The notes beneath the pieces are model-generated. The model saw only the letters and a program-made list of their open reading frames with translations. It did no database searches and was not told the DNA's origin. The position numbers and the translations under genes were made by a program. Shown one piece after another: positions 4,411 through 62,295 of a stretch of 64,000 bases of DNA. Positions within the stretch are counted from its first letter, which is position 1. Every line of letters begins with the position of its first letter. Origin of the DNA: Mustelus asterias (lineage: Eukaryota); contig NC_135808.1 of the NCBI RefSeq assembly GCF_964213995.1, positions 13,516,001-13,580,000 on the forward strand, given 5' to 3'.

Positions 4411-4439
4411 AAAGGGGTGAGCAGAGAGCGAGATGAGAA

Positions 4440-10475: not shown

Positions 10476-10638
10476 NNNNNNNNNNNNNNNNNNNNNNNNN
10501 NNNNNNNNNNNNNNNNNNNNNNNNNNNNNNNNNNNNNNNNNNNNNNNNNNNNNNNNNNNNNNNNNNNNNNNNNNNNNNNNNNNNNNNNNNNNNNNNNNNN
10601 NNNNNNNNNNNNNNNNNNNNNNNNNNNNNNNNNNNNNN
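10476..10638. other. Assembly gap (163 N)
   Basis: Run of n characters. Confidence 0.99.
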
Positions 10639-42616: not shown

Positions 42617-42754
42617 TCAGCTGCAGTCTGTCCTCTGTGCTAAAGCGTATATGGTCTCTTGAGGTCTCACATGTGTGTTAGGATGCAGTCTGGGCCCAGA
42701 CCACTGTAGAAAGGAGTATGTGAGCTCGCTGCCGTTCGATAGGGATCCCTCATT
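42617..42754 (-). CDS. Terminal coding exon with ITIM (LTYSFL) and ITSM-like (TIYALA) motifs
   Basis: Acceptor tcttttctgttctgtgcag|, phase 0; NEGSLSNGSELTYSFLQWSGPRLHPNTHVRPQETIYALAQRTDCS then TGA at 42619-42617. Confidence 0.85.
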   Translation of the reverse strand, partial: NEGSLSNGSELTYSFLQWSGPRLHPNTHVRPQETIYALAQRTDCS

Positions 42755-43090
42755 CTGCACAGAACAGAAAAGACCAGTTTATAGCAAGTGAAAAATAAAA
42801 AGCAGAGAAAGAAAACCATTGAAAATACACAACAGGTTAGTGAGCATCTACAGGGAGAAGGAGAGGTCTCTGTTTCAGTTCATGCTTTCTCTTCCTGAAA
42901 CTCCGATGTGGAAAGCTTTCGAACAAGACAGTAAAAATGGCTTAGATTTTAGTTGCCTGTTCCTGTGAGGAACACTTGGAACAGGATGAGGCCATTCAGC
43001 CCCAGGGTCTGTTCAATGAGATCATGGCTAATCTGCGTTCCAACTCCATTTACTTTTCTCCATATCTCTCCACGCCCTTACACAACAGAG

Positions 43091-43423
43091 ATCATAGAAT
43101 CATAGAATCCTACAGTGCAGAAGGAGGCCATTCGGCCCATCGAGTCTGCACCAAACACAATCCCACCCAGGCCCTATATCCGTAACCCCCATGCATTTAC
43201 CCTAGCTAGTCCCCCTGACACTAAGGGCAATTTAGCACGGCCAATCCGCCAAACCCGCACACTTTTGGAGTGTGGGAGGAAACCGGAGCACCCGGAGGAA
43301 ACCCAATCAGACACGGGGAGAATGTGCAGATTCTGCACAGACAGTGACCTAAGTCGGGATTCGAACCCGGGTCCCTGGCACTGTGAGGCAGCTGTGCTAA
43401 CCACTGTGCCACCGTGCCGCCCC
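43091..43423 (-). mobile_element. HE1/V-SINE type A (intronic)
   Basis: Full-length copy. Confidence 0.92.
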
Positions 43424-43869
43424 AAAGATCACTCCAATAAAAACAGAAAATGCAGGATCAGTGGAGAGAGAGAAACAGTTAACATTTTGAATCCGTTTCC
43501 CTCTTCTTCAAATCTCTCCATCCCGGTCTTGAAAACACCAATTGATTTCAACATCCTGTCTCACGCTGATTTTGGTTGACGTAAATATTGGTCAGGCCAC
43601 TGGGTGGAAATTCCCTGCTTTTTTTCCTAAAACAGTACTGTTATAAAACAGTTTAACCACTCAGTCAGCTTGCCTGTCTGTTGGAGCGCGCTTTGCATAA
43701 ATTTGGCTGCCACATTTCCTACACTATTAGAGACAATATACCTCATAAATGCCTCCTGGCACTGCTTGGGAGGTCTTATTTACACAATGTGTTCACGCAG
43801 GTGGTGATATCATTAAATGCTGTCAGGAACTAAGCTCAATTAATTGATAGAGATCAGTGACAGATACCA

Positions 43870-44199
43870 CAGAATCCCTGCAGTGCAAAAAGAGGCCATT
43901 CGGCCCATCGAGTCTGCACCCACTCTCTGAAAGAGCAACCCACGCGATCCCTGTAATCCCACGCATTTTTCCATGGCCAATCCACATAACCTACACATCT
44001 TAGAACACGAAGAGAGAATTCAACGTGGCCAATCCACTTAACCCGCACATCTTTGGACTGTGGGAGGAAACCAGAGCACCTGGAGGAAACCCACGCAGAC
44101 ACAGGGAGAACATACAAATTCCACACAGACAGTCACCCGAGGCCGGAATTGAACCGAGGTCCCTGGCACTATGAGGCAGCAGTGCTAACCACTGTGCCA
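43870..44199 (-). mobile_element. HE1/V-SINE type A (intronic)
   Basis: Near full-length copy. Confidence 0.9.
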
Positions 44200-44887
44200 T
44201 TTGCTATTCCCATGCTTTCTGTCAGAGCAAAGGCATTAGATCAAGATGTCTGACATTTTCAGTGATGAGACAGTGTGGGGAGAGTCCTCATTACATCTAA
44301 CGCAGGAAAGTTTTCAAACAACCATAACAAATCGCTGAAAGCAGATGTGTCGGGGATTAGTGTCATGAACCGAGCAAGATGGTTTCTTTTAGTTCGAGAA
44401 TTGGAAAGTCTAAGATGGAGTGCAGATCAGCCTTTGGCAGCACCAGTTTCCAGAACAATTTGGATTCATTCCAAAAATCACTTCTTATTGCTTTTTATAT
44501 TTCAATATCTATTGTCAAGCATAATTCCACTGCAGCTTATGACTTCCAATTGTGCCACTTAGAATCACTGGCCTAGTCATTCAGAGAGGCTAAAAATCTG
44601 GGAGTGCTAGTTCGAATCCTATCACATTAATTGGTGGAACTTAAATTGAATTCATGAATGAATTATTCAGCCAGAATTTGTTCCCTCTCTGAGAGAAATA
44701 GATAGATTTAGTAGTAAGAAATCAAAACCTTCAAGAGAAAAGTGTAGACAATTAACAAGTGAAATTTCTATAATGTGAAACACCGTGATGGGTCAGATCT
44801 GATGCTTTTTGTGACAATTGACAAGATTTACCTTCCCTATTTTCCTTTGCAAGAACCTTGACTCACAATAACCCAGTCCCTTCTTAC

Positions 44888-44967
44888 CTCAGCCAAGTCT
44901 TGTCTTGTTTCGCCAATAGGCTGAGCAGATATTTCCATGAGAGCCAAATCCTGTTGTCGCTGGCAAC
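44888..44967 (-). CDS. Short cytoplasmic exon of the Ig receptor
   Basis: Acceptor tgtttcaattcag| and donor GAG|gtaaga; 80 bp, phase 1 to 0, which bridges the TM exon to the last exon: GCQRQQDLALMEISAQPIGETRQDLAE. Confidence 0.8.
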
Positions 44968-45119
44968 CTGAATTGAAACACTCAATCAGTAACAGAATTG
45001 TTTACACTGTGTGTGAAAGATAAAATGCAAAGCTATTTAAAACACGATGAAGAGACAACAGGAAGAGCCTGCTAATGCTTTTAAATTGGACACTGCAAGC
45101 TCCAATTTTGTATTTAGTT

Positions 45120-45900
45120 CAAAGAACAAAGAAAGTTACAACATAGGAACAGGCCCTTCGGCCCTCCAAGCCTGCACCGACCATGCTGCCCAACTGAACT
45201 AACACCCCTACCCTTCCAGGGACCATATCCCTCCATTCCCATCCTATTCATATATTTGTCCAGACGCCCTTTAAAAGTCACTATCGTATCTGCTTCCACT
45301 ACCTCCCCCGGCAACGAGTTCCAGGCACCCACCACCGTGTGTGTAAAAATACTTGCCTCGTACATCCCCTTTAAACCTTGCCCCTCGCACCTTAAACCTA
45401 TGCCCCCTAGTAATTGACTCTTCCACCCTGGGAAAAAAGCTTCTGACTATCCACTCTGTCCATGCTCCTCATAATCTTGTAGACGTCTATCAGGTCGCTC
45501 CCCTCAACCTTCATCGTACCAGTGAGAACAAACCAAGTTACTCCAACCTCTCCTCATAGCTAATGCCCTCCATACCAGGGAACATCCTGGTAAATCCTTT
45601 CTGTACCCTCTCCAAAGCCTCCACGTCCTTCTGGTAGTGTGGCGACCAGAATTGAACACTATATTTCAAGTGCGGCCTAACTAAGGTTCTATGAAGCTGA
45701 AACATGACTTGCCAATTTTTAAACTCAATGTCCTGGCCGATGAAGGTAAGCATGCCGTATGCCTTCTTGACTACCTTCTCCACAAGCGTTGCCACTTTCA
45801 CTGATCTGTGTACCTGTACACCCTTTGCCTATCAATACTCTGAAGGGTTCTGCCATTTACTGTATATTTCCCATCTGTATTGGACCTTCCAAAATGCATT
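45120..45900 (-). mobile_element. CR1 3' fragment
   Basis: LVRPHLKYSVQFWSPHYQKDVEALERVQK; CR1 tail. Confidence 0.9.
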
Positions 45901-46036
45901 AATAATTTGACTTATTTTGATTTTTTCACCATGAAGAGCATAGTCTGAGAATCTGACTGGTTAATTACAGACACCAAAGCCCCAATCCTTGAGTTTACAC
46001 TGACAGTTAGTGATTTAAAATCTGTAAAAGGAAACA

Positions 46037-46842
46037 CCCTGAGCAGACTGTCACTGTCATTTGGCAGAATGCCTCATCACCAGAACTCACAAACAAGCAC
46101 CAAGACCTGGCTTGGCTGGTGGTGAGAAGGGCACTCCCCGTCAGATCCTTTATGCACGCCCGAGGTCTCAACATCACCGCACGCTGCCCTCGAAGCGGCT
46201 GCGGGGGTGATGAGGCGGTCGCACACCTCCTTGTGGAATGTGCCTTTACAAAGAAGGTCTGGAGTGAGGTGTAGTGGTATTTGTCGCGGTTCGTCCCGAG
46301 CAGTTCGGTGACGCAGGACTCTGTGCTCTACGGGCTGTTTGCGGGGACGCACACCGAGACAAATATCAACTGCTGCTGGAGGGTCATCAACTCGGTGAAG
46401 GATGTGCTTTGGTCCGCCCAAAACACGCTGATCTTCCAGTTGAAAGATTTGTCCTCGACCGAGTGTTACAGACTGGCACATTCCAAGGTCCAGGACTACG
46501 TGCTGAGGGACGCGCTCAAGCTTGGGGCAGCCGCCGCAAAGGCACAATGGGGAAAGGCCACCGTGTAAAGCCTTTCAACCGAGGCAGACCGAGGGCCCGG
46601 TAACTGTAGAATGCCCTCGGCCTGCGTAACTGTGTGCCAACCTGAAAAATAACGGCACTCTGATGTATGTATATAGTTTTTAAGTACTGAAATGTAATTA
46701 ATGTAATGTCGTGTAAATAAGCATAGTATTGTACTGTAAAAATGATTCTTTTTGCACCAATTGTAATTTTTGGATCTGTTGTTTTGCAATGGTTTGTTTG
46801 AGAGTTTTTTTTATGAATAAAGTATATTTTTGAAATTTAAAA
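46037..46842 (+). mobile_element. Tx1/L1-clade LINE 3' end with zf-RVT-like region, poly(A) and 20-bp TSD
   Basis: IWQNASSPELTNKHQDLAWLVVRRALPVR...CPRSGCGGDEAVAHLLVEC; AATAAA plus A tail; aaaatctgtaaaaggaaaca at 46017-46036 and 46843-46862. Confidence 0.88.
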
Positions 46843-47175
46843 AAAATCTGTAAAAGGAAACAAAGTCCAGCCAGATTGTCAGAACTTCCAGGAGTTGATG
46901 AAATCATTCTACATATTGTGCACGCATTATTTAAAAACACACAAAAAAATTGGTGAGAGTTCAGAAAACCCCAAATTAAATCCCCCTGTTGGCCAATAAA
47001 CATGACATACGTTCGTGATGTAATTCTGCTTTTACATTTTAGAAGTATCATGAACATTGTAAATATGTAAACTCATGGTGCCAAGCACTGTAAATCATTA
47101 ATGCACGAGCAGTTATACAAATCAATGCTGTACGTCAATTAGTCATGGAAATCAATAGGTAGAACTGGCTAGTGC

Positions 47176-47490
47176 GCAGCACTGTGGCACAGTGGTTAGC
47201 ACTGCTGCCTCACAGCGCCAGAGACCCTCGTTCGATTCCCAGTTTGGGTCACTGTCTGTCTGGAGTTTGCACATTCTCCCCATGTCTGCATGGGTTTCCT
47301 CCGTGTGCTCTGGTTTCCTCGCACAGAGGAAAGACTGAAAGGCTTGCTGGTTAGGCACTTTGGCCATGCTAAATTCTCCCTCAGTGTACCCCAACAGGCG
47401 CCAGAATGTGGCGACTAGGGGATCTTCACAGTAACTTCATTGCAGTGTTAATGTAAGCCGACTTGCGACTCATAAATAAACTTTACTTTT
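47176..47490 (+). mobile_element. HE1/V-SINE type B
   Basis: Full-length copy. Confidence 0.9.
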
Positions 47491-47642
47491 AATGGCATAA
47501 ATAAATGGTTTGTGCCGATGAGTCCTTCAAATCAATGGTTTGCATTTGATTTGTCATTGAAAACAGTACGTTCACATCCAGAAATTGTGCAAATCAGTTG
47601 TTGCTGTCCAGCAATCATGTAAATCAATGACTCACGTCTATT

Positions 47643-47940
47643 GGGCGGCACGGTGGTGCAGTGGTTAGCACCGCTGCCTCGCAGTGCCAGGGACCCGTGT
47701 TTGATTCCCTGGGTCACTGTCTATATGGAGTCTGCACGTTCTCCCAGTGGGTTTCCTCTGGGTGCTCCGGTTTCCTCCCACAGTCTAAAAGACGTGTGGG
47801 TTAGGTGGATTGGCCAGGCTAAATTCTCCCCAGTATACCCGAACAGGTGCCGGAGTGTGGCGACTAGGGATTTTCACAGTCACTTCATTGCAGTGTTAAT
47901 GTAAGCCGACTTGTCACGGTAACAAATACATTTAAAACTT
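47643..47940 (+). mobile_element. HE1/V-SINE type B
   Basis: Full-length copy. Confidence 0.9.
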
Positions 47941-48359
47941 CAACTATTCCATTAGATAAATGTTTAAGGTCTCTACCAGACTGACAGAAAGCTGCCTTAT
48001 GTGAAATATTCATTCTTCTAGTAACAGGAATCTATCTTATTTCTTCATGACTGACTCCCTCTGCTGATAGACCTCTGCTACAAGCCATCATTCTATCACT
48101 GAACACCAGCTCACACTGAAGAGGATAATTAGATGGTGTAATGAGACAGATTGCAAACTACAATGGCAGCTAAAGTGTAACGTGTTTGGTCCATGCATTC
48201 TCCACCATTCAACCATTATCCCCAACTCTTCCTCCTTTCCCCAGAGGTGTCAGTGTGGAAAGAGAGCCCTCCATCCTGCCTGGAGACACTCAGAGAAATA
48301 ACTGGGATGGGGAGAAGGATTCGCAGAGCAGCACAAATCAGATACATGTGAAGTTGGAG

Positions 48360-48717
48360 TTTATTTTTGTCACAAGTAGGCCTACATTAACACTGCTATG
48401 AAGTTACTGTGAAAATCCCCTCGTTGCCACACTCCGGTGCCTGTTCGGGTACACTGAGGGAGAATTTAGCATGGCCAAAGCACCTAACTAGCACGTCTTT
48501 TGGACTGAGGAGGAAACCGGAGCACTCGGAGGAAACCCATTTAGCAATTCGACTTATTTTGATTTCTTCACCATGCATTTCCTGAGAATTTAGCATGGCC
48601 AATGCACTGAGTCGGCATGGAGACCGTGCAGACTCTGCACAGACAGTGACCCAATCTGGGAATTGAACCCGGGTCCCTGGTGCTGTGAGGCAACAGTGCC
48701 AACCATTGCACCACCGT
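48360..48717 (-). mobile_element. HE1/V-SINE type B, internally rearranged
   Basis: Duplicated gaatttagcatggccaa block and a foreign segment at about 48540-48585. Confidence 0.8.
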
Positions 48718-49066
48718 GGGGGCGGGGGGAGGATGCGGGCAGTGCAAGAATTGAATGTCCCACATTTTCCGGAATGGTAGTTTGGCCGTTGATTCATTCA
48801 GTGACTGGACTATAGTTTGTACTTTTGACTGTGATCAATACTGTAAAAACCAGTGATATGAAATTAACTGTCCAGTATATCCCTGTCCAACTTCCCTCAA
48901 TATTGAACTCAATAGAAGTGAAGATTGGACAGCCAGCTGAATCAAAATGACACATCTTAGTCCCTCGCCCATAGTTGAAATTTACCACCTATTAATCCAG
49001 CTGAAGCCACGATCAGGCCTCTTTCCCATCTAACAGTCAGTCCCATCAGTCAGAGCAGCCACATAC

Positions 49067-49225
49067 CTGTGTGTTTCTTGGTCATCAGCAAGTGCAAGCA
49101 GACGAGGATAATGAGGAGACTCACAGCAGCAGCAGAGACACCGATCATTATGACATTCTCCACCTTGCCAGTTGTTGTGCTTATATGTGTTGAGGCTGAA
49201 ACAGTAGCGGTAGACGTCTCGCTGT
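49067..49225 (-). CDS. Exon encoding Ser/Thr-rich stalk plus transmembrane helix of the Ig receptor
   Basis: Acceptor ttgttttgttacag| and donor CAG|gtatgt; 159 bp, phase 1-1, in frame with the IgV exon: DSETSTATVSASTHISTTTGKVENVIMIGVSAAAVSLLIILVCLHLLMTKKHT (hydrophobic run followed by KK stop-transfer). Confidence 0.88.
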
Positions 49226-49605
49226 CTGTAACAAAACAATTTGATTATTCTAACAATAGAGACCCAAAAAAGCCAGAATTTAAGTAGAAATGGCCATTGG
49301 TCTAATAATTGACAATGACATTATTTATAGTTAAACCCAATTAACATTTGAACATTGGAGTTAGTTTGATTTTTTCAAAATGAAATAGAAGTATGAAAAC
49401 AAAATTAAAAATACGTTGGACATGTGCAGTGATACAACATGGGCAGAATTTTATTAAGCACCCATTATATAGCCTGCCCCATACTCTGTATGTATTGGAT
49501 TCAATTGTATCTCCTCCAGTCCCTTTATGTTCTCTTTTATAACATGGAGATCAGAACTGTTTACAATCCTCCAAATGTGGTGTAACCAAGACTCTGTCCA
49601 AATTT

Positions 49606-49924
49606 CATAGAATCCCTGCAGTGCACAAGGAGGCCATTTGGCCCATCAGGTCTACACCAACACCAATCCCACCCAGGCCCTATCCCTGTCAACCCACATA
49701 TTTACCCTGCTCATCCCTCTAACCAACACGTCCCAGGACACTAAGGGGCAATTTAGCAAGGTCAATCACCTGACCCACGTATCTTTGGAGTGTGGGAGGA
49801 AATCTATGCAGACATGGGGAGAATGTGCAAATTCCGCACAGACAGTGACTCAAGCCAGGAATCGAACCCAGCTCCCTGGAGCTGTGTGGCAGCAGTGCTA
49901 ACCACTGTGCCACCGTGCTGCCCC
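49606..49924 (-). mobile_element. HE1/V-SINE type A
   Basis: Full-length copy. Confidence 0.88.
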
Positions 49925-50389
49925 TCCACTTATGTAACTATTGATTTTCAATTTGATCCAATGCTGTTTCACCCCCAATTGCTGCATTTGGTTTATTTAT
50001 GGCCTTATTAGCCACTGTCTTGTGATCTTTGTATCTATACCCCAAGATCCTTTCATTCTTCTATCACTTGTGGACAATTCCTTTCCAAACAGCTTGTGTA
50101 AATGTAGCACCTATTAGCTAGGTTGAAGTTTATTTGCCAGTGATACACTCATTCTGCAAGTTGGTTAGTTACAGCTGGGAGCACAGCAGGTGGTCCAGGA
50201 GTTCAACAGGAACAAAACAGTGGTGGCAGAGACAAACAGACAGACAAAGAAACAGCGAGAGCAGCTGGAGTTCCAGCTGTACAGCGGGAAATCAAACACC
50301 GGCAGAGAGAGCGAGAAAGTACTGAGAGAACTGTGGGAGTGTGGGAATAAAGCAGCAACAAAGAAGAACCGCAGCACTGTGAGAAGAAT

Positions 50390-50582
50390 GGGAGGCCTAA
50401 GAGAGGGGACAGTGGCAGAGAGAGAGAGAGCACTGTGAGAAGAGTGGGAGGTTTGAGAGAGAAAGCAGACAGTGGCAGAGAGAGAGAGAGCACTGAGAGA
50501 AGAGTGGGAGGTTTGAGAGAGAAAGCACACAGTGGCAGAGAGAGAGAGAGCACTGTGAGAAGAATGGGAGGTCTGAGAGAGA
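50390..50582 (+). repeat. 60-bp tandem repeat, about 3 copies, containing (GA)n
   Basis: Lines 50401, 50461 and 50521 align: acagtggcagagagagagagagcactg(t/a)gagaagagtgggagg. Confidence 0.92.
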
Positions 50583-50814
50583 GGATAGTGGGGATAAACA
50601 GTGGCTGACAGAGAGCGTGCTATGGTTTGAGAGCACAGTGACTTCTGTGCAGAGGTAGTGGAGAGAGGGAGACCACTGTGAGATCAACTAAAAAAATACT
50701 GAGTAATGTCACAGGGCAACAATTGGCGAATTGATTCATGAAAATTGAAGTCCTTTTGCTGTAAGTCGGGTAGTGGATTAAACTCGGACTGAGATGTGAT
50801 AAAGTATTGCATTT

Positions 50815-51050
50815 ATAGCTGCAGACACTGTTTAACAGGTATAACATGCTCACTACCTATGAGGAAAAGGAGGAAAGCTGCAGGGGTAACAGCCACAGTG
50901 CAGACTAATACACTGTGTCTCAGAAAGCTGTCCAGTGGGGGGCAATGTAAGAGCAGTATAGAAATGGTAGTAATCAGGACCTCCATGATTTAGAGAATAT
51001 ATCGACCTCTGCAGTCAAGAATGTGAATCTCAGAGTGTGTGCTGCCAACT
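50815..51050 (+). mobile_element. Decayed CR1 ORF1 (SGNH esterase-like) remnant
   Basis: FNRYNML...VVIRTSMI...LCSQECESQSVCC resembles the CR1 ORF1 pattern SNRY...VVGDSIVR...CCLPGA. Confidence 0.5.
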
Positions 51051-51299
51051 GTAGGCTAATTCCAACACCCCCACCCTCCCTCCACCCTCCCGCCACCCCG
51101 CTTTCAAAGGGTGGTGAAAACCTTGGAGTTGGCGAACGAGGTGCACTTGACCGTGCCTGAAGGGGCAAGGAAGGCAGAGATAGTTTCAGTGATAGTTCAG
51201 CATTTAAATTTGTCAGGGGACACAGTGTGTAACATTGGAATTGGCTAAAATTCAATTCTAAATAAAACAGTTGCAATAAGAAAAAGAATTGAAACAGTT

Positions 51300-51866
51300 G
51301 AAACAGACTTAAAGAAATGAAGCAGTGTGAGCCAGTGGGGGTTGTTTAACTGGCAAAGGAAATTATGGTTGAATCTGAAGGAGATGCAAATGAATGGACG
51401 GCCTGCTCAGAAGTTGGTTGATAAGCAAGTATCAGATCTTTTTGAAGATTTTAATTGTGTGGGTAAGGTTTACTCATGTTAATCAATCTTTCATAGTGAG
51501 AAACTCAATCTTTCATGGTGAGAGATGAGGAGATATATGGTTCGGAAGGAGTATTGCCAGAAAAGGTGGTCATATGTGGAAGTGCTGAAGATAGTAACGT
51601 TCTATTATGTAAAGTAAGGTTAGAGAGTCCGGAGAAAAGTGGTGAAGTGGTGGTCGGAGTAATTCAGACAGGGAGACAGTTTACCCTGGGCAACAATATA
51701 GCTGGATTACAGGGGGTTACTGTGGAAAATCAAACAACTGAGGTGTTGCAGGAAGCGTATCATGGGATGTTTCCCGACTGTGCAGTAACAAGATCACAAA
51801 GACACAGGTTGAGGCAGGAGGAGGAGGAATTAAGGAGAAAAGATAAGGAGGCTGAGGTTCCGTTAT
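51300..51866 (+). mobile_element. Gypsy LTR retrotransposon protease-region remnant
   Basis: ORF 51515-51868: PEKVVICG...KVRLESPEKSGEVVVGV...LGNNIAG...FPDCAVTRSQ. Confidence 0.7.
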
Positions 51867-52240
51867 AAGAACATAAGAACATAAGAAATAGGAGCAGGAG
51901 TAGGCCATCTAGCCCCTCGAGCCTGCCCCGCCATTCAATAAGATCATGGCTGATCTGACGTGGATCAGTACCACTTACCCACCTGATCCCCATAACCCTT
52001 AATTCCCTTACCGATCAGGAATCCATCCATCCGCGCTTTAAACATATTCAGCAAGGTAGCATCCACCACCTCAGTGGGCAGAGAATTCCAGAGATTCACC
52101 ACCCTCTGGGAGAAGAAGTTCCTCCTCAACTCTGTCTTAAACCGACCCCCCTTTATTTTGAGGCTGTGTCCTCTAGTTTTAACTTCCTTACTAAGTGGAA
52201 AGAATCTCTCCGCCTCCACCCTATCCTGCCCCCGCATTAT
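51867..52240 (-). mobile_element. CR1 3' end
   Basis: TRGHSLKIKGGRFKTELRRNFFSQRVVNLWNSLP; (ttcttatg)n tail. Confidence 0.92.
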
Positions 52241-52293
52241 CAGAAACAATCTTTCACCTGCTGGGTGATAATGAACAAGAACAGGTGGAGGAC

Positions 52294-53039
52294 GTCATGA
52301 CACCACACAACCCTGCCACAGCAACCTCTGCAAGACGTGCCGGATCATCGACACGGATGCCATCATCTCACGTGAGAACACCATCCACCAGGTACACGGT
52401 ACATACTCTTGCAATTCGGCCAACGTTGTCTACCTGATACGCTGCAAGAAAGGATGTCCCGAGGCATGGTACATTGGGGAAACTATGCAGACGCTGCGAC
52501 AACGGATAAATGAACACCGCTCGACAATCACCAGGCAAGACTGTTCTCTTCCTGTTGGGGAGCACTTCAGCGGTCACGGGCATTCGGCCTCTGATATTCG
52601 GGTAAGCGTTCTCCAAGGCGGCCTTCGCGACACACGACAGCGCAGAGTCGCTGAGCAGAAACTGATAGCCAAGTTCCGCACACACGAGGACGGCCTCAAC
52701 CGGGATATTGGGTTCATGTCACACTATTTGTAACTCCCACAGTTGCGTGGACCTGCAGAGTTTCACTGGCTGTCTTGTCTGGAGCCAATACACATCTTTT
52801 TAGCCTGTCTTGATGCTCTCTCCACTCACATTGTTTCGTTTCTTAAAGACTTGATTAGTTGTAAGTATTCGCATTCCAACCATTATTCATGTAAATTGAG
52901 TTTGTGTCTTTATAAGCTCTGTTTGTGAACAGAATTCCCACTCACCTGAAGAAGGGGCTAAGAGCTCCGAAAGCTTGTGTGGCTTTTGCTACCAAATAAA
53001 CCTGTTGGACTTTAACCTGGTGTTGTTAAACTTCTTACT
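52294..53039 (+). mobile_element. Penelope-like element 3' part (GIY-YIG domain plus terminal repeat)
   Basis: NVVYLIRCKKGCPEAWYIGETMQTLRQRINEH...HEDGLNRDIGFMSHYL. Confidence 0.92.
52943..52979 (+). ncRNA. Minimal hammerhead ribozyme motif
   Basis: CAC-CTGAAGA-A-GGGGCT-aag-AGCTCC-GAAA-GC-TT^GTG. Confidence 0.8.
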
Positions 53040-53319
53040 CTCTTCTGCAACACCCATCCTCCTGTGCCCACCCTCCCTGGCCTCACCCAATCAACCTGCC
53101 CTAAGACCCCCCACATTTTCCTGGTCCAGGACCCCAGGGACTGGGATTGTGGGCAGTGCTTCCAGTCCCAGTCCTGTCCACTACAGCTTTAGATGTTGCG
53201 GGGCCGAGGGAGCTGAGAGACAATCTGATCGGCCTGCAGCTCTCTGAGGCGGAGGGGCAGAAGTCACTGTTTTAAAGCAACACAAAACTAAACTAATCCA
53301 ACAGGAACACAGCCCCTTC

Positions 53320-54732
53320 AAAGAGCAAAGAACAAAGAACAATACAGCACAGGAACAGGCCCTTCGGCCCTCCAAGCCTGCACCGATCATGTGTTCCTAA
53401 CTAGACCATCCGTTTGTATCCCTCTATTCCCAGTCTGTTCATGGGGCTATCTAGATAAGTCTTAAATGATCCTAGTGTGTCTGCCTCAACCACCTTGCTT
53501 GGTAGTGCATTCCAGGCCCCCACCACTCTCTGTGTAAAATATGTCCCCCGCATATCTGTATTGAACCTTGAACTTCTGACCCCTTGTGTTTGTCATTTCT
53601 GACCTGGGAAAAAGCTTCCAACTGTTCATCCTATCTATGCCCTTCATAATTTTATAAACTTCTATCAGGTCGCCCCTCAACCTCCGTCTTTCCAGGGAGA
53701 ACAACCCTAGTTTACTCAATCTCACCTCATAGCTAATACACTCCATACCAGGCAACATCCTGGTAAACCTTTTCTGCACTCTCTCCAAAGCCTCCACGTC
53801 CTTCTGGTAGTGTGGCGACCAGAACTGGACGCAGTATTCCAAATGTGGCCTAACCAACGTTCAATATAACTGTAACATCGTATGCCAACTGTTATACTCT
53901 ATGCCCCTTCCAATAAAGGCAAGCATGCCATATGCCTTCTTCACCACCTTTTCCACCTGTGCTGCCACCTTTAAGGATCTGTGGACTTGCACATCCAGAT
54001 CCCTCTATGTGTCTATACTCTTGATGGTTCTGCCATTTATTGTATAGCTCCCCTTTACATTAGATCTACCAAAATGCACCACTTCACATTTATCTGGATT
54101 AAATTCCATCTGCCATTTCTCTGCCCAATTTTCCAGCCTATCTATATCCTGCTGTATTCTCTGACAATGTTCATCACTATCCGCAACTCCTGCAATCTTT
54201 GTGTCGTCCGCAAACTTACTAATCAGACCAGCTACATCTTCTTCCAAATCATTTATATATATCACAAATGGCAGAGGTCCCAGTACAGAGCCCTGTGGAA
54301 CACTACTAATCACAGACCTCCAATCAGAAAAAGACCCCTCCACTGCTACCCTCTGTCTTCTATGGCCAAGCCAGTTCTGTACCCATCTAGCTAGTTCACC
54401 TTTGATCCCGTGAGATTTAACCTTTTGCACCAGCCTGCCATGAGGGACTAAAATCCATGTTGGTGACATCCACAGCCCTTCCCTCGTCAATCATTTTTGT
54501 CACCTCCTCAAAAAACTCAACCAAATTTGTGAGGCATGACCTCCCTCGTACAAAACCATGTTGTCTATCGCTAATGAGACTATTCAGTTCTAAATGTGTG
54601 TAGATCCTATCTCAAAGAATCTTCTCCAACAATTTCCCTACCACGGCGTCAAGCTCACTGGCCTATAATTACCCGAGTTATCCTTGCTACCCTTCTTAAA
54701 TAACGGGACCACATTTGCTATCCTCCAATCCT
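53320..54732 (-). mobile_element. CR1-clade LINE, 5'-truncated, decayed
   Basis: ORFs 54005-54490 (VPQGSVLGP, KFADDTK) and 53486-53857. Confidence 0.93.
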
Positions 54733-55172
54733 GCAGTTTAATCAAGCCATCTTTGGGGTAGTATACTTGAACCTGGGGTATCCTCTTGTTTTATGTGGGT
54801 TATTTAAAGGTTAATAGTGTTGTTATTAATAAACTTGTTGAACCTTTACTTGTGTTTGTCCTTTGTCCATCTTGCAAATAAGGGCACCGGGGTAAAACCT
54901 TGTAGTAAGCAAACTGGTCGAAAGTATCTGAGAATTAACAGGTACAACAGTGGCGACCCAAGTGGGACTTAGATAAGAAGTGATACGTTGCTCCGAAGTC
55001 GAACCTTCAACCCGGTATTCTCCAACACTCTGTCTGAGCCTGAATTAAGAGGGCAGCTGCCCCATGTGACGGCCAGTCTTAAGTGAGTGAAGGACTAATA
55101 CAGATTCGACCAGTAAATTGGGCCATAAACCTGGTGTCTGTAACACAAGGTGGACAAACTGTGTAGTTAGAA

Positions 55173-55824
55173 TTATCTACCAGGTACACGGTACATACTC
55201 TTGCAACTCGGCCAATGTTGTCTACCCGATACGCTGCAGGAAAGGATGTCCCGAGGCATGGTACATTGGGGAAACCATGCAGACGCTACGACAACGGATG
55301 AATGAACACCGCTCAACAATCACCAGGCAAGACTGTTCTCTTCCTGTGGCGGAGCACTTCAGCAGTCACGGACATTCAGCCTTGGATCTTCAGGTAAGCG
55401 TTCTCCAAGGCGGCCTTCACGACACACGACAGCGCAGAGTCGCTGAGCAGAAACTGATAGCCAAGTTCCGCACACATGAGGACGGCCTAAACCGGGATGT
55501 TGGACTTATGTCACATTATCAGTAACCCCCACAGCTTTCACCCTGATCTTGCAGAATCTTACTAGCTGTTCTGTCTGGAGACAATATACATATTGTCTCC
55601 AGACAATGTTCCCTCCACCCACATTATCTGTACCTTTAAGACCTGGCTGGCTGTAGAGATTTGCATTCTAATTAGTATTCTGTAACTTGATTTCTGTGTC
55701 TCTGTGCACTGTTGGAGAACAGATTTTCACTCCATCTGACGAAGGGGCAGCGCTCCGAAAGCTTATGGTATTTGCTACCAAATAAACCTGTTGGACTTTA
55801 ACCTGGTGTTGTGAGACTTCTCAC
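55173..55824 (+). mobile_element. Penelope-like 3' part with 11-bp TSD
   Basis: GIY-YIG ORF 55118-55525 (WYIGETMQTLRQRMNEH); tgtagttagaa at 55162-55172 and 55825-55835. Confidence 0.9.
55732..55768 (+). ncRNA. Minimal hammerhead ribozyme motif with covaried stem I
   Basis: CCAT-CTGACGA-A-GGGGC-agc-GCTCC-GAAA-GC-TT^ATGG. Confidence 0.82.
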
Positions 55825-57281
55825 TGTAGTTAGAACTAGAACAGTCTAGGGAATTTGGGTAAAGTCTAAGGGCGGGAATTTAGTGAAAACCGGACCCCTA
55901 CCCCGATCCCTTACCTATACTCAAGTGACGAATCCTAAAAGGAAATAATTATGGCCAGTCATGCTGAACGGGAGGAAGTTCTCTGTTTATATTTGAACCA
56001 CAAGTGGCCAAATGGGTGACGCCCATCCCCACCCCAGTGAGTGGGGATATATACTCCACTCACTCATCCAATGGCAGGAAGGGAAATGCTAAATAAATAT
56101 CCCGGCCAGGGTCTGTTTCCCTTGAAAAGTGAAGGTTAAAGGGGAACTAATGGAGGCATTAAAATTATCAAAAGTTAAAATGCATGTGGGGAGAGCTCCC
56201 TCTTGTGGGGAAAGAGCATAACTAAAGGCCATCAATGTAAAACTGCCAAGATTTCAGAAGACATGTCCTGACCCAAAGAGTGGTGAGAATGTGGAACTTG
56301 CTATCACAGGGAATGTTTGAAGCAAATAATTTAGATGCATTTAAGAGAAAGCCAGGAAAGTGTTTGAGAGAGATGGTTACAATGATAGGTTTAAATAAGG
56401 AAAAGTGGGAGGAGGTTTCAGTGGAGCAGAAACACCAGCATGCACGGTGTGGACCGAGTTATCATCCACATATTTTGAATTTGTATTCCGAATTTCACTG
56501 TTCAGGTTATTTATGCAAATTCTGGACAGCAGTAATCCCAGCACTGATCCTTGGTGAACACAACACCGCACCTTTCGTCTGTTCAGCTAACCAGCGTCAG
56601 CCCCTTGCTCAGTTTTCTGTTTTGTAGTTACCTTGCTATGCATTCTGCTACTTTTCACTGGCTCCATGGATTTCCCATCCCATTGCTGAAAGAGATGCTG
56701 CAAAACTCATTCCATTTGAGGTGGAATTTCTAACCCCTGCCTGTGTTTTACAGGGTGGGCTGGGGGTTGGGAGGGGAGGGGGGGGGGGGGGGGGGGGGTG
56801 GTGTACTGCTTGCCCCGCTCCCAGAAGAAAAGTTGGTCCAGAACTCACTGACGCCACCCCACATAATGTGCCCTGAGTACCTTTTAAGGTGGTGAGGGTC
56901 GGGATTTGTCCCTCAGTTATGGGGCTCAATAGTCCAAACGGCAAGCAGCCTATAGTGGGTGCCACTTGCCACCCATATTTTGGGGAGCAGGGTGAGCGGG
57001 AAGGCAGTGAGCCAGATAGCCAACCTATCTGTCCTGACCCATCGCTCTGTGAGAAACACACCCAACCGGGTTCTGTGGTGAGCTAAGGGCACAGATTGTG
57101 CTCCGATTGGATGTGGTCAGTTCCTGAAGGGAGGAGCTGGAGGAGGGAGGGGAGGGGAATTCTCAGCACAGCCAGGGTAGGAGGTGGGAAAGACACTCCC
57201 AACATTTCACACCCCTCCCCCCAGGGGAACATCACTGTGCCCACATTTTCCCACCTTCCTCATCAGGCTCATATCTGGTAT

Positions 57282-57471
57282 TTCTTTTGATACCAATCAA
57301 GTAAACGAACTCAAATTAACTTAGGGACAAAGTAAAAGGGGCGGCTCCCCAAAAGGAAGGGGGGAACAGCCCGAACCAAAAACAAAGTCGAAAGCAAACT
57401 TAAAACGTCAAACCAAAAGGTGATTATCGGGGTCGATAATACACCCCAGCCCCTGCGGCGCCCAGCGGTCG
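57282..57471 (-). mobile_element. Very short Tx1/L1-clade 3' end with 12-bp TSD
   Basis: Minus strand DRWAPQGLGCIIDPDNHLLV* plus T-rich UTR; catatctggtat at 57270-57281 and 57472-57483. Confidence 0.75.
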
Positions 57472-57582
57472 CATATCTGGTATCTTACTCAAAGCCTTTC
57501 AGAAATTTCAATAGTTTGAAACAGTTTAACTAATTTTCCAGAATCCCCTTCCTGAAAGGAAGAGTTTAATGTGAATTCTTAC

Positions 57583-57975
57583 CTGTCCCGTTATAGACTG
57601 TCAGAGTCACATTGCCTTTTCTGGTTGTGCCCTCAGCATTAATATAAACAGAGATCACATAGACCCCACTGTCATTCGTCTGTACATTCCGCAATAACAA
57701 GGATCCATTGTCTGGATAGAGGTGAACTCGGTCCTGGTAGGAAGGAGATGTCACCAGGTGAACTGAACACTTATACCCGGATCTGTCAGGGTCTGGAGAG
57801 CAGTTTGATCGGATCAGTGTCAAAAGTGCAGTGTTCCCGGGGAATAAACTCCACTCTAACCTTAAAGAGGAGTTGTGTAGAGGAGTGGAATAGGAGACAG
57901 GGAGAAGGACAGACTGGTTCACTGTCCCATTCACTTCCCTCTGATGGACCGTCACAGTAACACTGCTTCCCGAGG
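57583..57975 (-). CDS. Exon encoding an Ig V-set domain (CD2/SLAM/CEACAM/HEPACAM-like, no canonical B-F Cys pair) of an ITIM-bearing receptor gene
   Basis: Acceptor ttttcctttctgttgttgcag| and donor CAG|gtaaga; 393 bp, phase 1-1. Translation SGSSVTVTVHQREVNGTVNQSVLLPVSY...LEWSL...YQDRVHLYPDNGSLLLRNVQTNDSGVYVISV...GNVTLTVYNGT has V-set hallmarks (C-strand W, D-strand R, NGSLLL, DSGxY). Overlaps ORF 57566..57955. Confidence 0.92.
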
Positions 57976-58299
57976 CTGCAACAACAGAAAGGAAAAGTGA
58001 ATTAGTTTTCAGTCACATTCGACAGTATTCCCCGTCAGTAAATTAAACTCTGCACAAAAAGAGAAATGGGAGTGAACTGAGACAAGTGGAAATTGAGGCA
58101 ACATCTGTGGAGAATTTAGCGTGGCCAATGCACCTAACCAGCATGTTTCTCGGACTGTGGGAGGAAACTGGAGCACCCAGAGGAAACTCACGCTATTATT
58201 GAGATATTGCAGAAAGTGTAGCATTGAATAGAAAGGGAATAAGGGGAAGGGGAAATAGAATACACAGTAATCCCACACCGGGAAAGTAATGGAATAGTC

Positions 58300-58750
58300 T
58301 GTTAAAGGGTTAATAGTCACACAAGTTTAAAAATCACACAGGGTGAAAAACAAAGGTCTTCTGATAAGAGCCTTCACAGACAGACAGCAAGGCCATTAGC
58401 CTGGCAAAGCACATAAATCAGACATCTGTAACTAGAAAATGGGAGTGATCCACATACAGAAACGAGCTGTACTATCAAGTTTTCTTACTGATTGGATATT
58501 ATAATGAAGCAAGCGTAAAGTGATTGTGATTGGTTTATGCTAATTACTTGTAATCGATTTTGAAAACTTTAATAGCCTTCGTATTTTGGAATACGCCACT
58601 CTGGCTAGCGACAGAGATGTGAACTGTAGCTTCCCAGCGTCCTTGCTATAGTTTGTATTAAAACAGCTGTTTAAAAGAACTCTGTTACTTATCTTGTTAC
58701 TCGAAGGGTAAGGTTGTGATCAATTAAAAGGCTGACATCAAAGCCCGCAA
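58300..58750 (+). mobile_element. LTR-like repeat (same family as 20235-23065)
   Basis: tgttaaagggttaatagtcacacaagtttaaaaatca start; gattggtttatgctaattacttgtaatc block; ends near caaca. Confidence 0.55.
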
Positions 58751-61419: not shown

Positions 61420-62295
61420 TCTGGTGAACTGGTGTGGCAAAAATAATCTCTCCCTCAATGTCAACAAAGTGAAGGAAATAGCCATCGACTTCAGGAAGGA
61501 GAACATGCTCCTGTCTACATCAATGGGGACGAAGTGGAAATGGTCGAGAGCTTCAAGTTTTTAGGTGTCCAGATCACCAACAACCTGTCCTGGTCTCCCC
61601 ATGCTGACACTATATTTAAGAAAGCCTACCAACGTCTCTACTTTCTCAGAAGACTAAGGAAATTTGGCACATCAGCTACGACTCACACCAACTTTTATAG
61701 AAGCAGCATAGAAAGCATTCTTTCTGGCTGTATCACAGGTTGGTATGGCTCCTGCTCTGCCCAAGACCACAAGAAACTACAAAAGGTCGTGAATGTAGCC
61801 CAATCCATCACACAAACCAGCCTCCCATCCACTGACTCTGTCTACACTTCCTGCTGCCTCAGCAAAGCAGCCAGCATAATTAAGGACCCCACGCACCCCG
61901 GACATTCTCTCTTCCACCTTCTTCTATCGGGAAAAAGATACAAAAGTCTGAGGTCACGTACCAAACGACTCAAGAACAGCTTCTTCCCTGCTGCCATCAG
62001 ACTTTTGAATGGACGTACCTTGCATTAAGTTGATCTATCACCAGGGTGATAGGGAGTGGGGTAGCATGATCTTGGTTTCAGATAAAGCTCGGCACAACAT
62101 CGTGAGCCGAAGGGCCTGTTCTGTGCTGTACTGTTCTATGTTGTATGTTTCTCTACACCATAGCTATGACTGTAACACTACATCCTGCACCCTCTCGTTT
62201 TCTTCTCTATGAACTGTATGCTCTGTATAATGTGCAAGAAACAATACTTTTCACTGTATGCTAATACACGTGACAACAATAAATCACATCAAATC
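61420..62295 (+). mobile_element. Rex1/Babar 3' part with a CR1 tail fragment (about 62040-62150) in its UTR
   Basis: ORF 61534-62028: KKAYQRLYFLRRLRKFG...KNSFFPAAIRLLN. Confidence 0.9.

What the first reader, a model, noticed from the sequence alone, without database searches (positions are those of the whole stretch)
42617..57975. Hidden spliced gene: single-IgV inhibitory receptor with ITIM plus ITSM-like tail and PD-1-like exon phasing
Seen: four unique-sequence islands among TEs have GT-AG sites and phases 1-1, 1-1, 1-0 and 0-stop (393, 159, 80, 138 bp) that join into one open frame of about 256 aa: IgV, stalk, TM, cytoplasmic tail. The tail has LTYSFL (ITIM consensus S/I/V/LxYxxI/V/L) and, 23 residues later, TIYALA (ITSM consensus TxYxxV/I, off at the last position; human SLAMF1 has a similar TIYVAA). 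The TM has no Lys/Arg/Asp/Glu, so there is no sign of DAP12 or FcR-gamma coupling. Established: human PDCD1 has the same layout and intron phases (IgV, stalk+TM, short phase 1-0 exon, ITIM/ITSM exon), and tandem motifs like these recruit SHP-1/SHP-2. Inference: a cartilaginous-fish inhibitory receptor combining a PD-1-like tail with a CD2/CEACAM-type V domain, possibly undescribed.
Basis: partly seen in the sequence, partly recalled or inferred. Interest (0 to 1): 0.85.

Follow-up and report, generated by a model that had tools for sequence, protein, structure and literature searches.

The report
Shark single-IgV ITIM receptor gene
The four exons are real and form an already annotated but unstudied smooth-hound shark gene for a one-domain inhibitory immune-type receptor, which looks more like the CEACAM family than like PD-1.

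Summary
Observation confirmed. Four minus-strand exons (393, 159, 80 and 138 bp) have AG/GT borders and the stated phases. They encode a V-set domain, a stalk plus uncharged TM, a linker, and a tail with LTYSFL and, 23 residues on, TIYALA.

The gene is not hidden. RefSeq XP_078073544.1, "uncharacterized protein LOC144496850 [Mustelus asterias]" (280 aa), holds all four exon translations in order, plus a 25-residue leader whose exon lies outside the window. Contigs from two public runs of related organisms stop at the IgV exon borders and run on unlike the introns.

Interpretation partly supported. An ITIM-type inhibitory receptor is likely: both tyrosines are kept in shark and ray orthologues. 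PD-1 kinship is not supported. The best named sequence matches are CEACAM N domains, though CEACAM membership is unproven because synteny could not be tested.

In three other shark species an Arg-TM, short-tailed partner has a V domain 92-98% identical to the ITIM form, which marks a paired-receptor family. Differences from relatives in the V exon are mostly non-synonymous.

I found no paper on this family. The scan noted the V domain before (s1-893041).

The parts
57583..57975 (-). IgV (V-set) exon, 393 bp, phase 1-1. It encodes 130 full codons with 8 N-glycosylation sequons. There are no Cys at the canonical B and F strand positions.
   Evidence: PF07686, E 2.8e-9; 8 sequons; AG/GT. AlphaFold2 model pLDDT 89.5, pTM 0.82. 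V-set fold: Z 16.9 to VCBP3 V domain, rmsd 2.2 over 123 residues. Contigs of runs X1 and X2 end at 57583 and 57976.
57767..57802 (-). Private Cys pair (exon residues 58 and 69, in the predicted C' and C'' strands) within SNCSPDPDRSGYKCS.
   Evidence: these are the only two Cys in the exon. Both are invariant in 13 of 13 ITIM-type orthologues (C83 and C94 of the 280-aa protein). That they form a disulfide is inferred.
57812..57841 (-). C-C' loop and start of the C' strand (exon residues 45-54). Amino-acid changes against two related organisms cluster here.
   Evidence: In X1, 8 of its 21 changed codons lie here and 7 of those 8 are non-synonymous. In X2, 4 of its 8 changed codons lie here and all 4 are non-synonymous.
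49067..49225 (-). Stalk plus TM exon, 159 bp, phase 1-1. The stalk has 12 Ser/Thr in its first 20 residues.
   Evidence: RefSeq isoforms in 4 other species skip exactly the equivalent segment.
49083..49154 (-). Transmembrane segment VIMIGVSAAAVSLLIILVCLHLLM. It has no K/R/D/E.
   Evidence: Hydropathy scan, (mean 2.6).
44888..44967 (-). First cytoplasmic exon, 80 bp, phase 1-0.
   Evidence: Conserved in orthologues (G209, D215 and E220 invariant or nearly so).
42617..42754 (-). Last coding exon, 135 bp coding plus TGA. It holds both tyrosine motifs.
42707..42724 (-). ITIM LTYSFL, followed by QW (aromatic residue at +5).
   Evidence: The tyrosine is invariant in 13 of 13 orthologues (Y248).
42638..42655 (-). 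Membrane-distal motif TIYALA. It is ITSM-like but has Ala at +3.
   Evidence: The tyrosine is kept in at least 90% of 13 orthologues (Y271). The shark consensus is ETIYAFAQK. Rays have [IV]IY[ST]APRK.

Best explanation
The locus is the Mustelus asterias gene LOC144496850. It encodes a 280-residue type I membrane glycoprotein. Its parts are a signal peptide (exon outside the window), one heavily N-glycosylated V-set domain, an O-glycosylation-type stalk, an uncharged TM and an 80-residue tail. The V-set domain lacks the canonical disulfide but has its own conserved Cys pair.

The likely mechanism is inferred from the motifs and not shown here. Ligand binding on the C-C'-C''-F-G face clusters the receptor. 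Src-family kinases then phosphorylate the conserved ITIM tyrosine (LTYSFLQW) and the distal TIY tyrosine. The tandem SH2 phosphatases SHP-1/SHP-2 are recruited and dampen activating signals.

The gene belongs to a family found across sharks and rays. In at least three other species this family also has an Arg-in-TM, short-tailed member with a nearly identical V domain, so it is a paired inhibitory/activating receptor family. Its V domain is nearest by sequence to CEACAM-type N domains, and its V exon changes mainly at the amino-acid level between relatives. That pattern is usual for receptors under pathogen or ligand pressure.
For: Gene model:
- The exon translations are exact substrings of XP_078073544.1.
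- X1 contig: 1063 letters, of which 552-945 lie on 57583-57976. X2 contig: 414 letters, of which 1-296 lie on 57681-57976. Both leave the genome at the exon borders, although 583 and 524 flanking bases were offered.
- TM-less isoforms in 4 species are cut at the same exon borders.

Inhibitory type:
- ITIM consensus is present, the TM is uncharged, and Y248 is invariant and Y271 nearly so in 13 orthologues from sharks and rays.
- The aromatic residue at +5 and Ala at +1 of the second motif fit the SHP-2 SH2 preferences described in PMC12151841 (passages).

Paired family:
- V-domain identity between the ITIM and Arg-TM forms within a species is 92.3% (Hemiscyllium), 92.9% (S. canicula) and 97.7% (C. 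punctatum).
- Same-type identity between Hemiscyllium and Chiloscyllium is 85.4% and 83.8%.
- The C. punctatum pair clusters at 100/96 support.

CEACAM-like V domain:
- 29 of 55 PDB matches are CEACAMs and they head the list.
- With the family profile, CEACAM6 scores 6e-9, CEACAM1 4e-7 and CEACAM8 7e-7.
- Named distant hits are CEACAM5-like, CEACAM3-like, CEACAM1 and PSG22-like.

Diversification:
- X1: 19 of 21 changed codons are non-synonymous (24 of its 30 differences were listed).
- X2: 6 of 8 changed codons are non-synonymous (9 of 9 listed). The exon has 292 non-synonymous and 98 synonymous sites.
Against: - No binding or expression data exist.
- Neither run is on record as RNA. Only the IgV exon borders were laid, so the other three junctions rest on the RefSeq model and on conservation.
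- The second motif misses the ITSM consensus at +3.
- YSFL is also a YxxPhi sorting motif.
- No Arg-TM partner was found in M. asterias: none in the window and none among database candidates. Both searches are limited.
- The CEACAM link is weak. PDB alignments cover only the C''-G half. JAML ties with CEACAM6 (6.1e-9). Structure searches give only a generic V-set fold, and CEACAM is not in the top 50 of either.
- The tail profile reaches Tupaia CEACAM1 only at E 0.021 among 170 sequences, and BLASTP finds nothing.
- The activating partners use a TM Arg, not an ITAM tail.
- If the 6 unlisted X1 differences were all synonymous, dN/dS would be about 0.9, not above 1.
- Orthology of the X1 and X2 contigs is not shown.
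Confidence: 0.65

Rival explanations
1. It is a relative of PD-1 (CD28/CTLA-4/PD-1 group), as the exon layout and the tandem ITIM/ITSM-like tail suggested to the first reader.
For: It has one IgV, a stalk+TM exon, a short phase 1-0 exon, and a last exon with two tyrosine motifs about 23 residues apart.
Against: - The V domain lacks the canonical Cys pair.
- No PD-1 chain appears among 55 PDB matches at E<=1 or among the best 60 of 212 with the profile.
- The tail does not fit the PD-1 consensus of PMC12151841. It has T at -1 instead of D/E, S at +1 instead of G, I at -1 instead of E, and LA at +2/+3 instead of TI.
- That paper reports a separate true PD-1 in cartilaginous fish.
Confidence: 0.03
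2. It is a SLAM/CD2-family member that has lost its C2 domain, signalling through SAP-type adaptors at the TIY motif.
For: - The V domain is disulfide-less.
- The TIY core has a hydrophobic residue at -1, as in the CD150 motif discussed in PMC12151841.
- SLAMF5 scores 4.9e-5 and CD48 3.8e-4 with the family profile.
- Pfam Receptor_2B4 scores E 0.13.
- CD48 gives Z 14.2, rmsd 2.1 over 94 residues.
Against: - There is no C2 exon. The RefSeq protein has one Ig domain, and no Ig family was found in the two longest minus-strand open segments of intron 1.
- The first motif is an ITIM, and +3 of the second is Ala or Pro, not Val or Ile, across the family.
- CEACAM chains score better than SLAM chains.
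Confidence: 0.1
3. It is mainly an adhesion or trafficking molecule of HEPACAM-like type. The tyrosine motifs serve endocytosis and sorting (YxxPhi), not phosphatase recruitment.
For: Automatic names of some relatives are HEPACAM-like or HEPACAM2-like. YSFL fits YxxPhi. Heavy glycosylation and a mucin-like stalk suit an adhesion molecule.
Against: - Conservation extends beyond YxxPhi: L/V at -2, L at +3 and an aromatic residue at +5.
- A second conserved tyrosine lies at tandem-SH2 spacing.
- Arg-TM partners with near-identical V domains are typical of immune paired receptors.
- The HEPACAM names are pipeline labels, and no HEPACAM chain appears in the PDB lists shown.
Confidence: 0.15
4. It is a chance set of open frames or a dead gene among transposons.
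For: The introns are full of transposon remains: RVT_1 at 54008-54490 and GIY-YIG at 52275-52730 and 55091-55522.
Against: The frame is intact, with consensus splice sites. It is identical to a RefSeq model. Orthologues exist in 12 other species. Spliced-looking contigs come from two runs.
Confidence: 0.01

Closest known systems
CEACAM1 (mammalian, long-tail form; e.g. Tupaia chinensis CEACAM1, P0109; PDB N domains of CEACAM1/5/6/8)
   Same: - The N-terminal V-type domain lacks the canonical disulfide.
- CEACAM N domains give the best PDB sequence matches.
- The tail has an ITIM of the xxYSxLx[FW] type followed by ETIY near the C-terminus. Compare the P0109 tail. The colinear 40-residue profile match has E 0.021.
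- A cytoplasmic exon whose length is not a multiple of three. From the bases, skipping the 80-bp exon would put a stop two codons after the TM exon. This recalls the short-tail CEACAM1 form, a comparison made from memory.
- Both families are paired, with V-exon homogenisation and non-synonymous change on the CC'C''FG face, as described for Xenopus Ceacams in PMC5112662 (passages).
   Different: - It has no IgC-type domains.
- It has a private Cys pair in C'/C''.
[quoted passage not shown]
- +3 of the second motif is Ala or Pro.
- The activating partners carry a TM Arg and a short tail instead of an ITAM tail.
- Sharks also have separate 'PSG22-like' multi-Ig genes with ITAM-type tails (P0034, P0054).
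- Synteny was not tested.
Unnamed single- or multi-V receptors of birds, turtles, amphibians and chimaera (Anas P0001/P0133, Calidris P0052, Pangshura P0063, Pelobates P0013, Callorhinchus P0086)
   Same: - They are 35-45% identical in the V domain and are the best non-elasmobranch hits.
- Birds show the same NCS...CS Cys pair region.
- Tails carry two tyrosine motifs.
- Amphibian members have Arg-TM and short tails.
   Different: - A branch with 100/99 support separates these 16 rows from the 20 elasmobranch rows.
- Motif order differs in birds and turtles: TIYARI comes first, then xxYTSI.
- The pipeline names disagree (CEACAM-like versus HEPACAM2-like).
- PMC13278318 reports no complete CEACAM1 in ducks and chicken. 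The duck and chicken hits may therefore be another family.
PD-1 (PDCD1)
   Same: One IgV, an uncharged TM, a tandem tyrosine-motif tail in the last exon, and probable SHP-2-type signalling.
   Different: PD-1 has the canonical disulfide and its own conserved motif consensus (PMC12151841). There is no detectable sequence match. A true shark PD-1 is reported.
SLAM/CD2 family
   Same: A disulfide-less V domain, a TIY core, and weak profile matches to SLAMF5 and CD48.
   Different: No C2 domain, an ITIM as the first motif, and no TxYxx[VI] motif.
Other paired Ig-like receptor families with TM-Arg/Lys activating forms (KIR, LILR, SIRP, PILR, NITR; recalled, not tested)
   Same: The same logic applies: an ITIM form and a charged-TM short-tailed form share almost the same ectodomain.
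   Different: The V-domain sequence is not close to them in the searches shown. PILRA appears only as a fold match, Z 14.4.

Membership tests
CEACAM family | N-terminal IgV-like domain without the canonical B-F disulfide | tested here: met
   The exon has only two Cys, at residues 58 and 69, in the C'/C'' region. The model has the full V-set strand set.
CEACAM family | N domain closer in sequence to CEACAM N domains than to other Ig families | tested here: inconclusive
   29 of 55 PDB matches are CEACAMs and they lead the list. With the profile, CEACAM6 scores 6e-9 but JAML 6.1e-9, and alignments cover only the C''-G half. Named distant hits are CEACAM/PSG-like, while others are named HEPACAM-like. 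Fold searches do not discriminate.
CEACAM family | [quoted passage not shown] | tested here: not met
   Residues 1-25 of the 280-aa protein are not encoded in the IgV exon. That exon supplies only two bases of residue 25, and the 130 full codons it encodes start at residue 26, SGSS....
CEACAM family | Position in the CEACAM locus (markers such as LIPE, TOMM40, BCL3, CNFN, PAFAH1B3; PMC3628338 and PMC13278318 passages) | not testable with these tools
No other gene was recognised in the window.
CEACAM family | CEACAM1-type ITIM/ITSM tail | tested here: inconclusive
   The ITIM is present, and the second motif has the ETIY core but Ala at +3. The tail profile matches Tupaia CEACAM1 at E 0.021 among 170 sequences. 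BLASTP finds no alignment.
PD-1 | Canonical IgV disulfide and detectable similarity to PD-1 V domains | tested here: not met
   No canonical Cys. No PD-1 among 55 PDB matches at E<=1.
PD-1 | Tail consensus (I/V)(D/E)YG(E/V)L(D/E)F and (T/V)EYATIx(F/Y) (PMC12151841) | tested here: not met
   The window has LTYSFLQW and TIYALAQR. The family consensus is LTYSLLQW and TIYAFAQK.
PD-1 | Exon layout and intron phases like PDCD1 | not tested
The PDCD1 phases stand in a figure of PMC12151841 that is not held. The layout is common among Ig-superfamily receptors (my knowledge).
SLAM/CD2 family | V domain followed by a C2 domain | tested here: not met
   The 280-aa protein has one Ig domain. No Ig family was found in the two longest minus-strand open segments of intron 1. 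Shorter segments were read by eye only.
SLAM/CD2 family | One or more ITSM TxYxx[VI] | tested here: not met
   No match in the tail of the window's gene or of the ITIM-type orthologues.
ITIM-bearing inhibitory receptors (functional class) | [SILV]xYxx[ILV] in the cytoplasmic tail, with an uncharged TM | tested here: met
   The tyrosine is invariant in 13 of 13 orthologues.
ITIM-bearing inhibitory receptors (functional class) | Phosphotyrosine-dependent recruitment of SHP-1/SHP-2/SHIP | not testable with these tools
   Needs a bench assay.
Paired receptors | An activating-type counterpart with a nearly identical ectodomain | tested here: inconclusive
   Met in Hemiscyllium (92.3%), S. canicula (92.9%) and C. 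punctatum (97.7%). No counterpart was found for M. asterias in the window or in two database searches, and both are limited in reach.

The most novel reading that the evidence does not exclude
This gene represents an undescribed receptor family found across sharks and rays and related to CEACAMs. In it, a single-V ITIM receptor and an Arg-TM partner keep their V exons alike within each species, probably by gene conversion, while the ligand face diversifies between species. On this reading the receptor/decoy arms-race logic known from CEACAM1/CEACAM3 was already in place in cartilaginous fish, but was wired through a charged-TM adaptor route instead of an ITAM tail.
Probability: 0.4. Interest if true: 0.6.

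Novelty: new member of a known kind. Interest (0 to 1): 0.42.

Why it matters
Paired inhibitory/activating Ig-like receptors are a recurring product of host-pathogen conflict. Their history before bony vertebrates is poorly charted. For CEACAMs in cartilaginous fish, the papers I could read cite only little skate ESTs (PMC3628338, PMC4079198; passages).

This is a compact family with clear orthologues from sixgill sharks to rays. It has an invariant ITIM tyrosine, a conserved non-canonical TIYAxA/P second motif and Arg-TM partners. That gives a simple system for asking three questions:
- How old is receptor/decoy pairing?
- Which SH2 proteins read a TIYxxA motif?
- What ligands or pathogens drive V-domain change in sharks?

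As a gene finding it is ordinary, because the model is already in RefSeq.

Tried and rejected
- Paralogous exons in the window: tblastn of the four exon translations against the window found only the exons themselves.
- Leader exon: not in the window. I therefore dropped the plan to lay reads upstream to find the leader junction.
- Extra Ig exon in the introns: minus-strand open segments of 70 aa or more were listed. Ten segments were scanned with Pfam. They gave RVT_1, GIY-YIG and ALKBH8_N (transposon-type) or nothing, and no Ig domain.
- Structure as a family test: Foldseek and VIA-align gave generic V-set neighbours (VCBP3, VSIG4, B7-H3, MPZ, nectins, TIGIT, PD-L1, CAR). Neither CEACAM nor PD-1 is in the top 50 of either, so structure does not help decide.
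- ESM Atlas: generic V-set clusters (VSIG10L2, TIGIT, CD200R-like, 2B4, CD22-like). This does not decide either.
- Tail homology to CEACAM1: BLASTP found nothing. The profile match is weak, E 0.021.
- Arg-TM partner in M. asterias: not found. The word index and length limits mean this blank says little.
- Literature: five searches found no paper on this family. Subscription journals are not covered.
- Supplementary files were not opened. Additional file 1 of PMC5112662 (phases of Ceacam cytoplasmic exons), the supplementary figures of PMC13278318 and Supplementary File 1B of PMC12151841 (shark PD-1 sequences) may bear on the exon-phase and PD-1 comparisons.
- The statements on human SLAMF1 TIYVAA, PDCD1 phases, CEACAM1 short and long forms, and FcR-gamma/DAP12 pairing are recalled and come from no call.

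Full report
THE OBSERVATION

The first three have GT on the 3' side, and the fourth ends in TGA. The lengths are 393, 159, 80 and 138 bp.

Read in the stated phases, they give four products:
- a 130-residue domain;
- a 52-residue Ser/Thr-rich stalk plus hydrophobic segment;
- a 26-residue linker;
- a 45-residue tail.

Pfam calls the first one V-set (E 2.8e-9, above the curated cut-off). The TM segment VIMIGVSAAAVSLLIILVCLHLLM has no K, R, D or E. The tail has LTYSFL and TIYALA, with the tyrosines 23 residues apart.

THE GENE IS ALREADY ANNOTATED

A search of the IgV exon against 1.84 billion representative proteins gave 436 hits at E<=0.001. One of them, P0002 (280 aa), is 100% identical to the exon. 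Each of the four exon translations is an exact substring of P0002, in order, at residues 26-155, 157-208, 210-235 and 236-280. The single residues D and G between them are what the split codons predict.

P0002 is XP_078073544.1, "uncharacterized protein LOC144496850 [Mustelus asterias]". So the window is from the starry smooth-hound, and the spliced model is already in RefSeq, unnamed. Its first 25 residues (the leader) are not encoded anywhere in the window. The gene therefore starts beyond position 64000.

TRANSCRIPT EVIDENCE

Two public runs hold part of the IgV exon. Neither is on record as RNA. I laid their contigs on 57000-58500:
- Run X1 has a contig of 1063 letters. Letters 552-945 lie on 57583-57976 with 30 differences and no gaps. 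The other 551 and 118 letters lie on nothing.
- Run X2 has a contig of 414 letters. Letters 1-296 lie on 57681-57976 with 9 differences. Another 118 letters run on.

The stretch offered 583 bases below and 524 bases above the exon. Even so, both contigs leave the genome at the exon borders. The one extra base at 57976 is expected: the leader exon must end in G, and the intron also ends in G. The 551 letters are enough for the 377 nt of the three downstream exons plus 174 nt of 3' UTR.

I take these for spliced transcripts of related organisms (92% and 97% alike). One caveat: at the 90% threshold a diverged intron of a relative would also fail to lie. But it would not end the match at both borders to within one base, nor in two runs at the same border. 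Only the IgV exon's borders were tested this way. The other three junctions rest on RefSeq and on conservation.

In addition, RefSeq isoforms of four other species (S. canicula, C. plagiosum, C. punctatum, Stegostoma) lack exactly the segment that matches the window's stalk/TM exon. This places the same two exon borders in those species.

THE FAMILY

Relatives, all called "uncharacterized" except one "hepatic and glial cell adhesion molecule-like", occur widely:
- Sharks: Scyliorhinus (2 species), Carcharodon, Cetorhinus, Heterodontus, Heptranchias, Hemiscyllium, Chiloscyllium (2 species) and Stegostoma.
- Rays: Pristis, Mobula and Narcine. Hemitrygon, Leucoraja and Amblyraja have members with other tails.

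In an alignment of 13 ITIM-type members:
- the ITIM tyrosine is invariant, with consensus LTYSLLQW;
- the second tyrosine is kept in at least 90% (sharks ETIYAFAQK, rays [IV]IY[ST]APRK);
- the two Cys of the V domain are invariant.

However, the second motif never has Val or Ile at +3, so it is not a canonical ITSM anywhere in the family.

PAIRED RECEPTORS

Some members have a different C-terminal half: an Arg inside the TM segment (LLLR...) and a short tail without tyrosine motifs. These are P0005 of S. canicula, P0154/P0009 of Hemiscyllium, P0166 of C. punctatum and P0018 of Leucoraja.

Within a species, their V domains are 92.3%, 92.9% and 97.7% identical to that of the ITIM member. The same-type genes of Hemiscyllium and Chiloscyllium are only 85.4% and 83.8% identical. 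In a tree of 37 V domains the C. punctatum pair joins at 100/96 support and the S. canicula pair at 82/48. For that tree I chose 40 of the 147 proteins with an extracted V domain, those whose names I knew. Three of the 40 (P0034, P0054, P0050) had no full-length V match and dropped out.

This is the pattern of paired inhibitory/activating receptors whose ectodomain exons are kept alike within a species. For M. asterias itself I found no such partner: not in the window and not among database candidates. These blanks are weak.

CHANGE IN THE V EXON

I classed the differences listed for the two contigs:
- X1: 24 of its 30 differences were listed. They change 21 codons, 19 of them non-synonymously.
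- X2: 9 of 9 differences were listed. They change 8 codons, 6 of them non-synonymously.

The exon has 292 non-synonymous and 98 synonymous sites. For the listed X1 changes, 22 of 24 altered letters fall in codons that change the residue. The chance of at least that many under neutrality is 0.039. If all six unlisted differences were synonymous, the ratio would fall to about 0.9.

Sixteen of the 19 changed residues lie at positions 45-81 and 111-112. In the model these are the C-C', C', C'' and F-G parts. This is the face on which CEACAM papers describe diversification (PMC5112662, passages).

The orthology of the contigs is not shown, so this is an indication and not a measurement.

WHICH KNOWN FAMILY

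Sequence searches point to CEACAM:
- 29 of the 55 PDB sequences matched at E<=1 are CEACAMs, and they lead the list.
- With a 29-sequence family profile the order is CEACAM6 6e-9, JAML 6.1e-9, CEACAM1 4e-7 and CEACAM8 7e-7. SLAMF5 follows at 4.9e-5 and CD48 at 3.8e-4.
- Of the 30 hits whose names I looked up, six carry CEACAM or PSG names: Anas acuta CEACAM5-like, Pelobates and Lissotriton CEACAM3-like, Tupaia CEACAM1, and two shark PSG22-like. The rest are uncharacterized or carry generic names.
- Some bird fragments in another search are labelled HEPACAM-like.
- The tail of Tupaia CEACAM1 (…VAYSSLNF…ETIYSEV…) resembles the shark tail. It is the best non-elasmobranch match of a tail profile, but only at E 0.021 among 170 sequences. 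BLASTP finds nothing.

Points against simple CEACAM membership:
- The alignments cover only the C''-G half of the domain.
- Fold searches are non-specific.
- The IgV exon does not carry part of the leader as CEACAM N exons do (PMC13278318).
- The activating partners use a TM Arg and not an ITAM tail.
- The elasmobranch family is split by a 100/99 branch from the chimaera, amphibian, bird, turtle and mammal rows.
- PMC13278318 reports no complete CEACAM1 in ducks and chicken, although intact duck and chicken proteins are among my hits. Those hits may therefore not be CEACAM1.
- Synteny could not be tested.

I file the gene as CEACAM-like by V-domain sequence, with membership unproven.

PD-1

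PD-1 is not supported:
- There is no sequence match.
- The V domain has no canonical disulfide.
- The tail does not fit the PD-1 consensus.
- A true PD-1 is reported in cartilaginous fish (PMC12151841, passages).

The shared exon layout is what most Ig-superfamily receptors have (my knowledge).

MECHANISM

What is shown: the protein's parts and their conservation.

What is inferred: the ITIM, with L at -2, L at +3 and W at +5, and the TIYA motif lie at tandem-SH2 spacing. After phosphorylation they recruit SHP-1/SHP-2 and inhibit activating receptors. The Arg-TM relatives pair with an acidic-TM adaptor and activate.

Also inferred, from the bases: skipping the 80-bp exon would give a stop two codons after the TM exon, that is, a short-tailed form.

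VERDICT

The gene is real and already annotated. The PD-1 reading fails. The CEACAM-like, paired-receptor reading is the best one, at moderate confidence.

Interest is moderate. This is an unstudied member of a well-known kind of receptor, from a family with clean features for evolutionary and signalling work.

Noticed in passing
window 52275-52730 (+), 55091-55522 (+), 54008-54490 (-), 61447-62025 (+): Transposon remains in and around intron 1. There are two GIY-YIG endonuclease-like open segments (E 2.9e-5 and 0.0013). Taking these for Penelope-like elements is my own inference. There is also an RVT_1 reverse transcriptase fragment (E 1.3e-16) and an ALKBH8_N-type match (E 8.2e-12), which I take for a LINE tail.
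   Followed up: partly
window 57255-57509 and 58071-58223: Hundreds of short contigs of runs X1, X2 and X4 pile up here, with summed depths in the thousands to hundreds of thousands. I take these for high-copy repeats (SINE-like) flanking the IgV exon. Similar translated repeats (…GTVAQWLALLPHSARDPG…) recur on both strands across the window.
   Followed up: no
window 50373-50582: A 60-bp tandem repeat, 3.6 copies, 90% matches, inside intron 1.
   Followed up: no
window 38722-39234 and 39988-40019: C-rich tandem repeats (periods 16-48) and a 32-base C run downstream of the gene. GC is 0.55 with strong negative skew.
   Followed up: no
window 3900-5400: A G-rich low-complexity block (GC 0.58, GC skew +0.58). 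It gives long repetitive open frames on both strands.
   Followed up: no
window 10476-10638: A run of 163 N.
   Followed up: no
orthologues P0170, P0161, P0160, P0015 (other species): RefSeq isoforms in four shark species skip the stalk/TM exon in frame. That would give a secreted V domain fused to the 'cytoplasmic' tail sequence. Whether these are real products is unknown.
   Followed up: partly
orthologues P0014, P0151-P0153 (Mobula hypostoma): The tail module is duplicated: two ITIMs (ITYTLL, LMYSLL) and two IIYSAPRK motifs.
   Followed up: no
hits P0034 (Scyliorhinus torazame) and P0054 (Heterodontus francisci): Sharks also have multi-Ig 'pregnancy-specific glycoprotein 22-like' genes whose tails fit an ITAM pattern (STYMGL…SVYSEL). 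This is a second CEACAM-like lineage.
   Followed up: no
hits P0013, P0032, P0043, P0099, P0114, P0142: Several hits have an Arg inside the TM segment and tails of only 3-10 residues. P0013 is from Pelobates. I did not look up the species of the other five. The shared TM pattern made me suspect amphibians.
   Followed up: no
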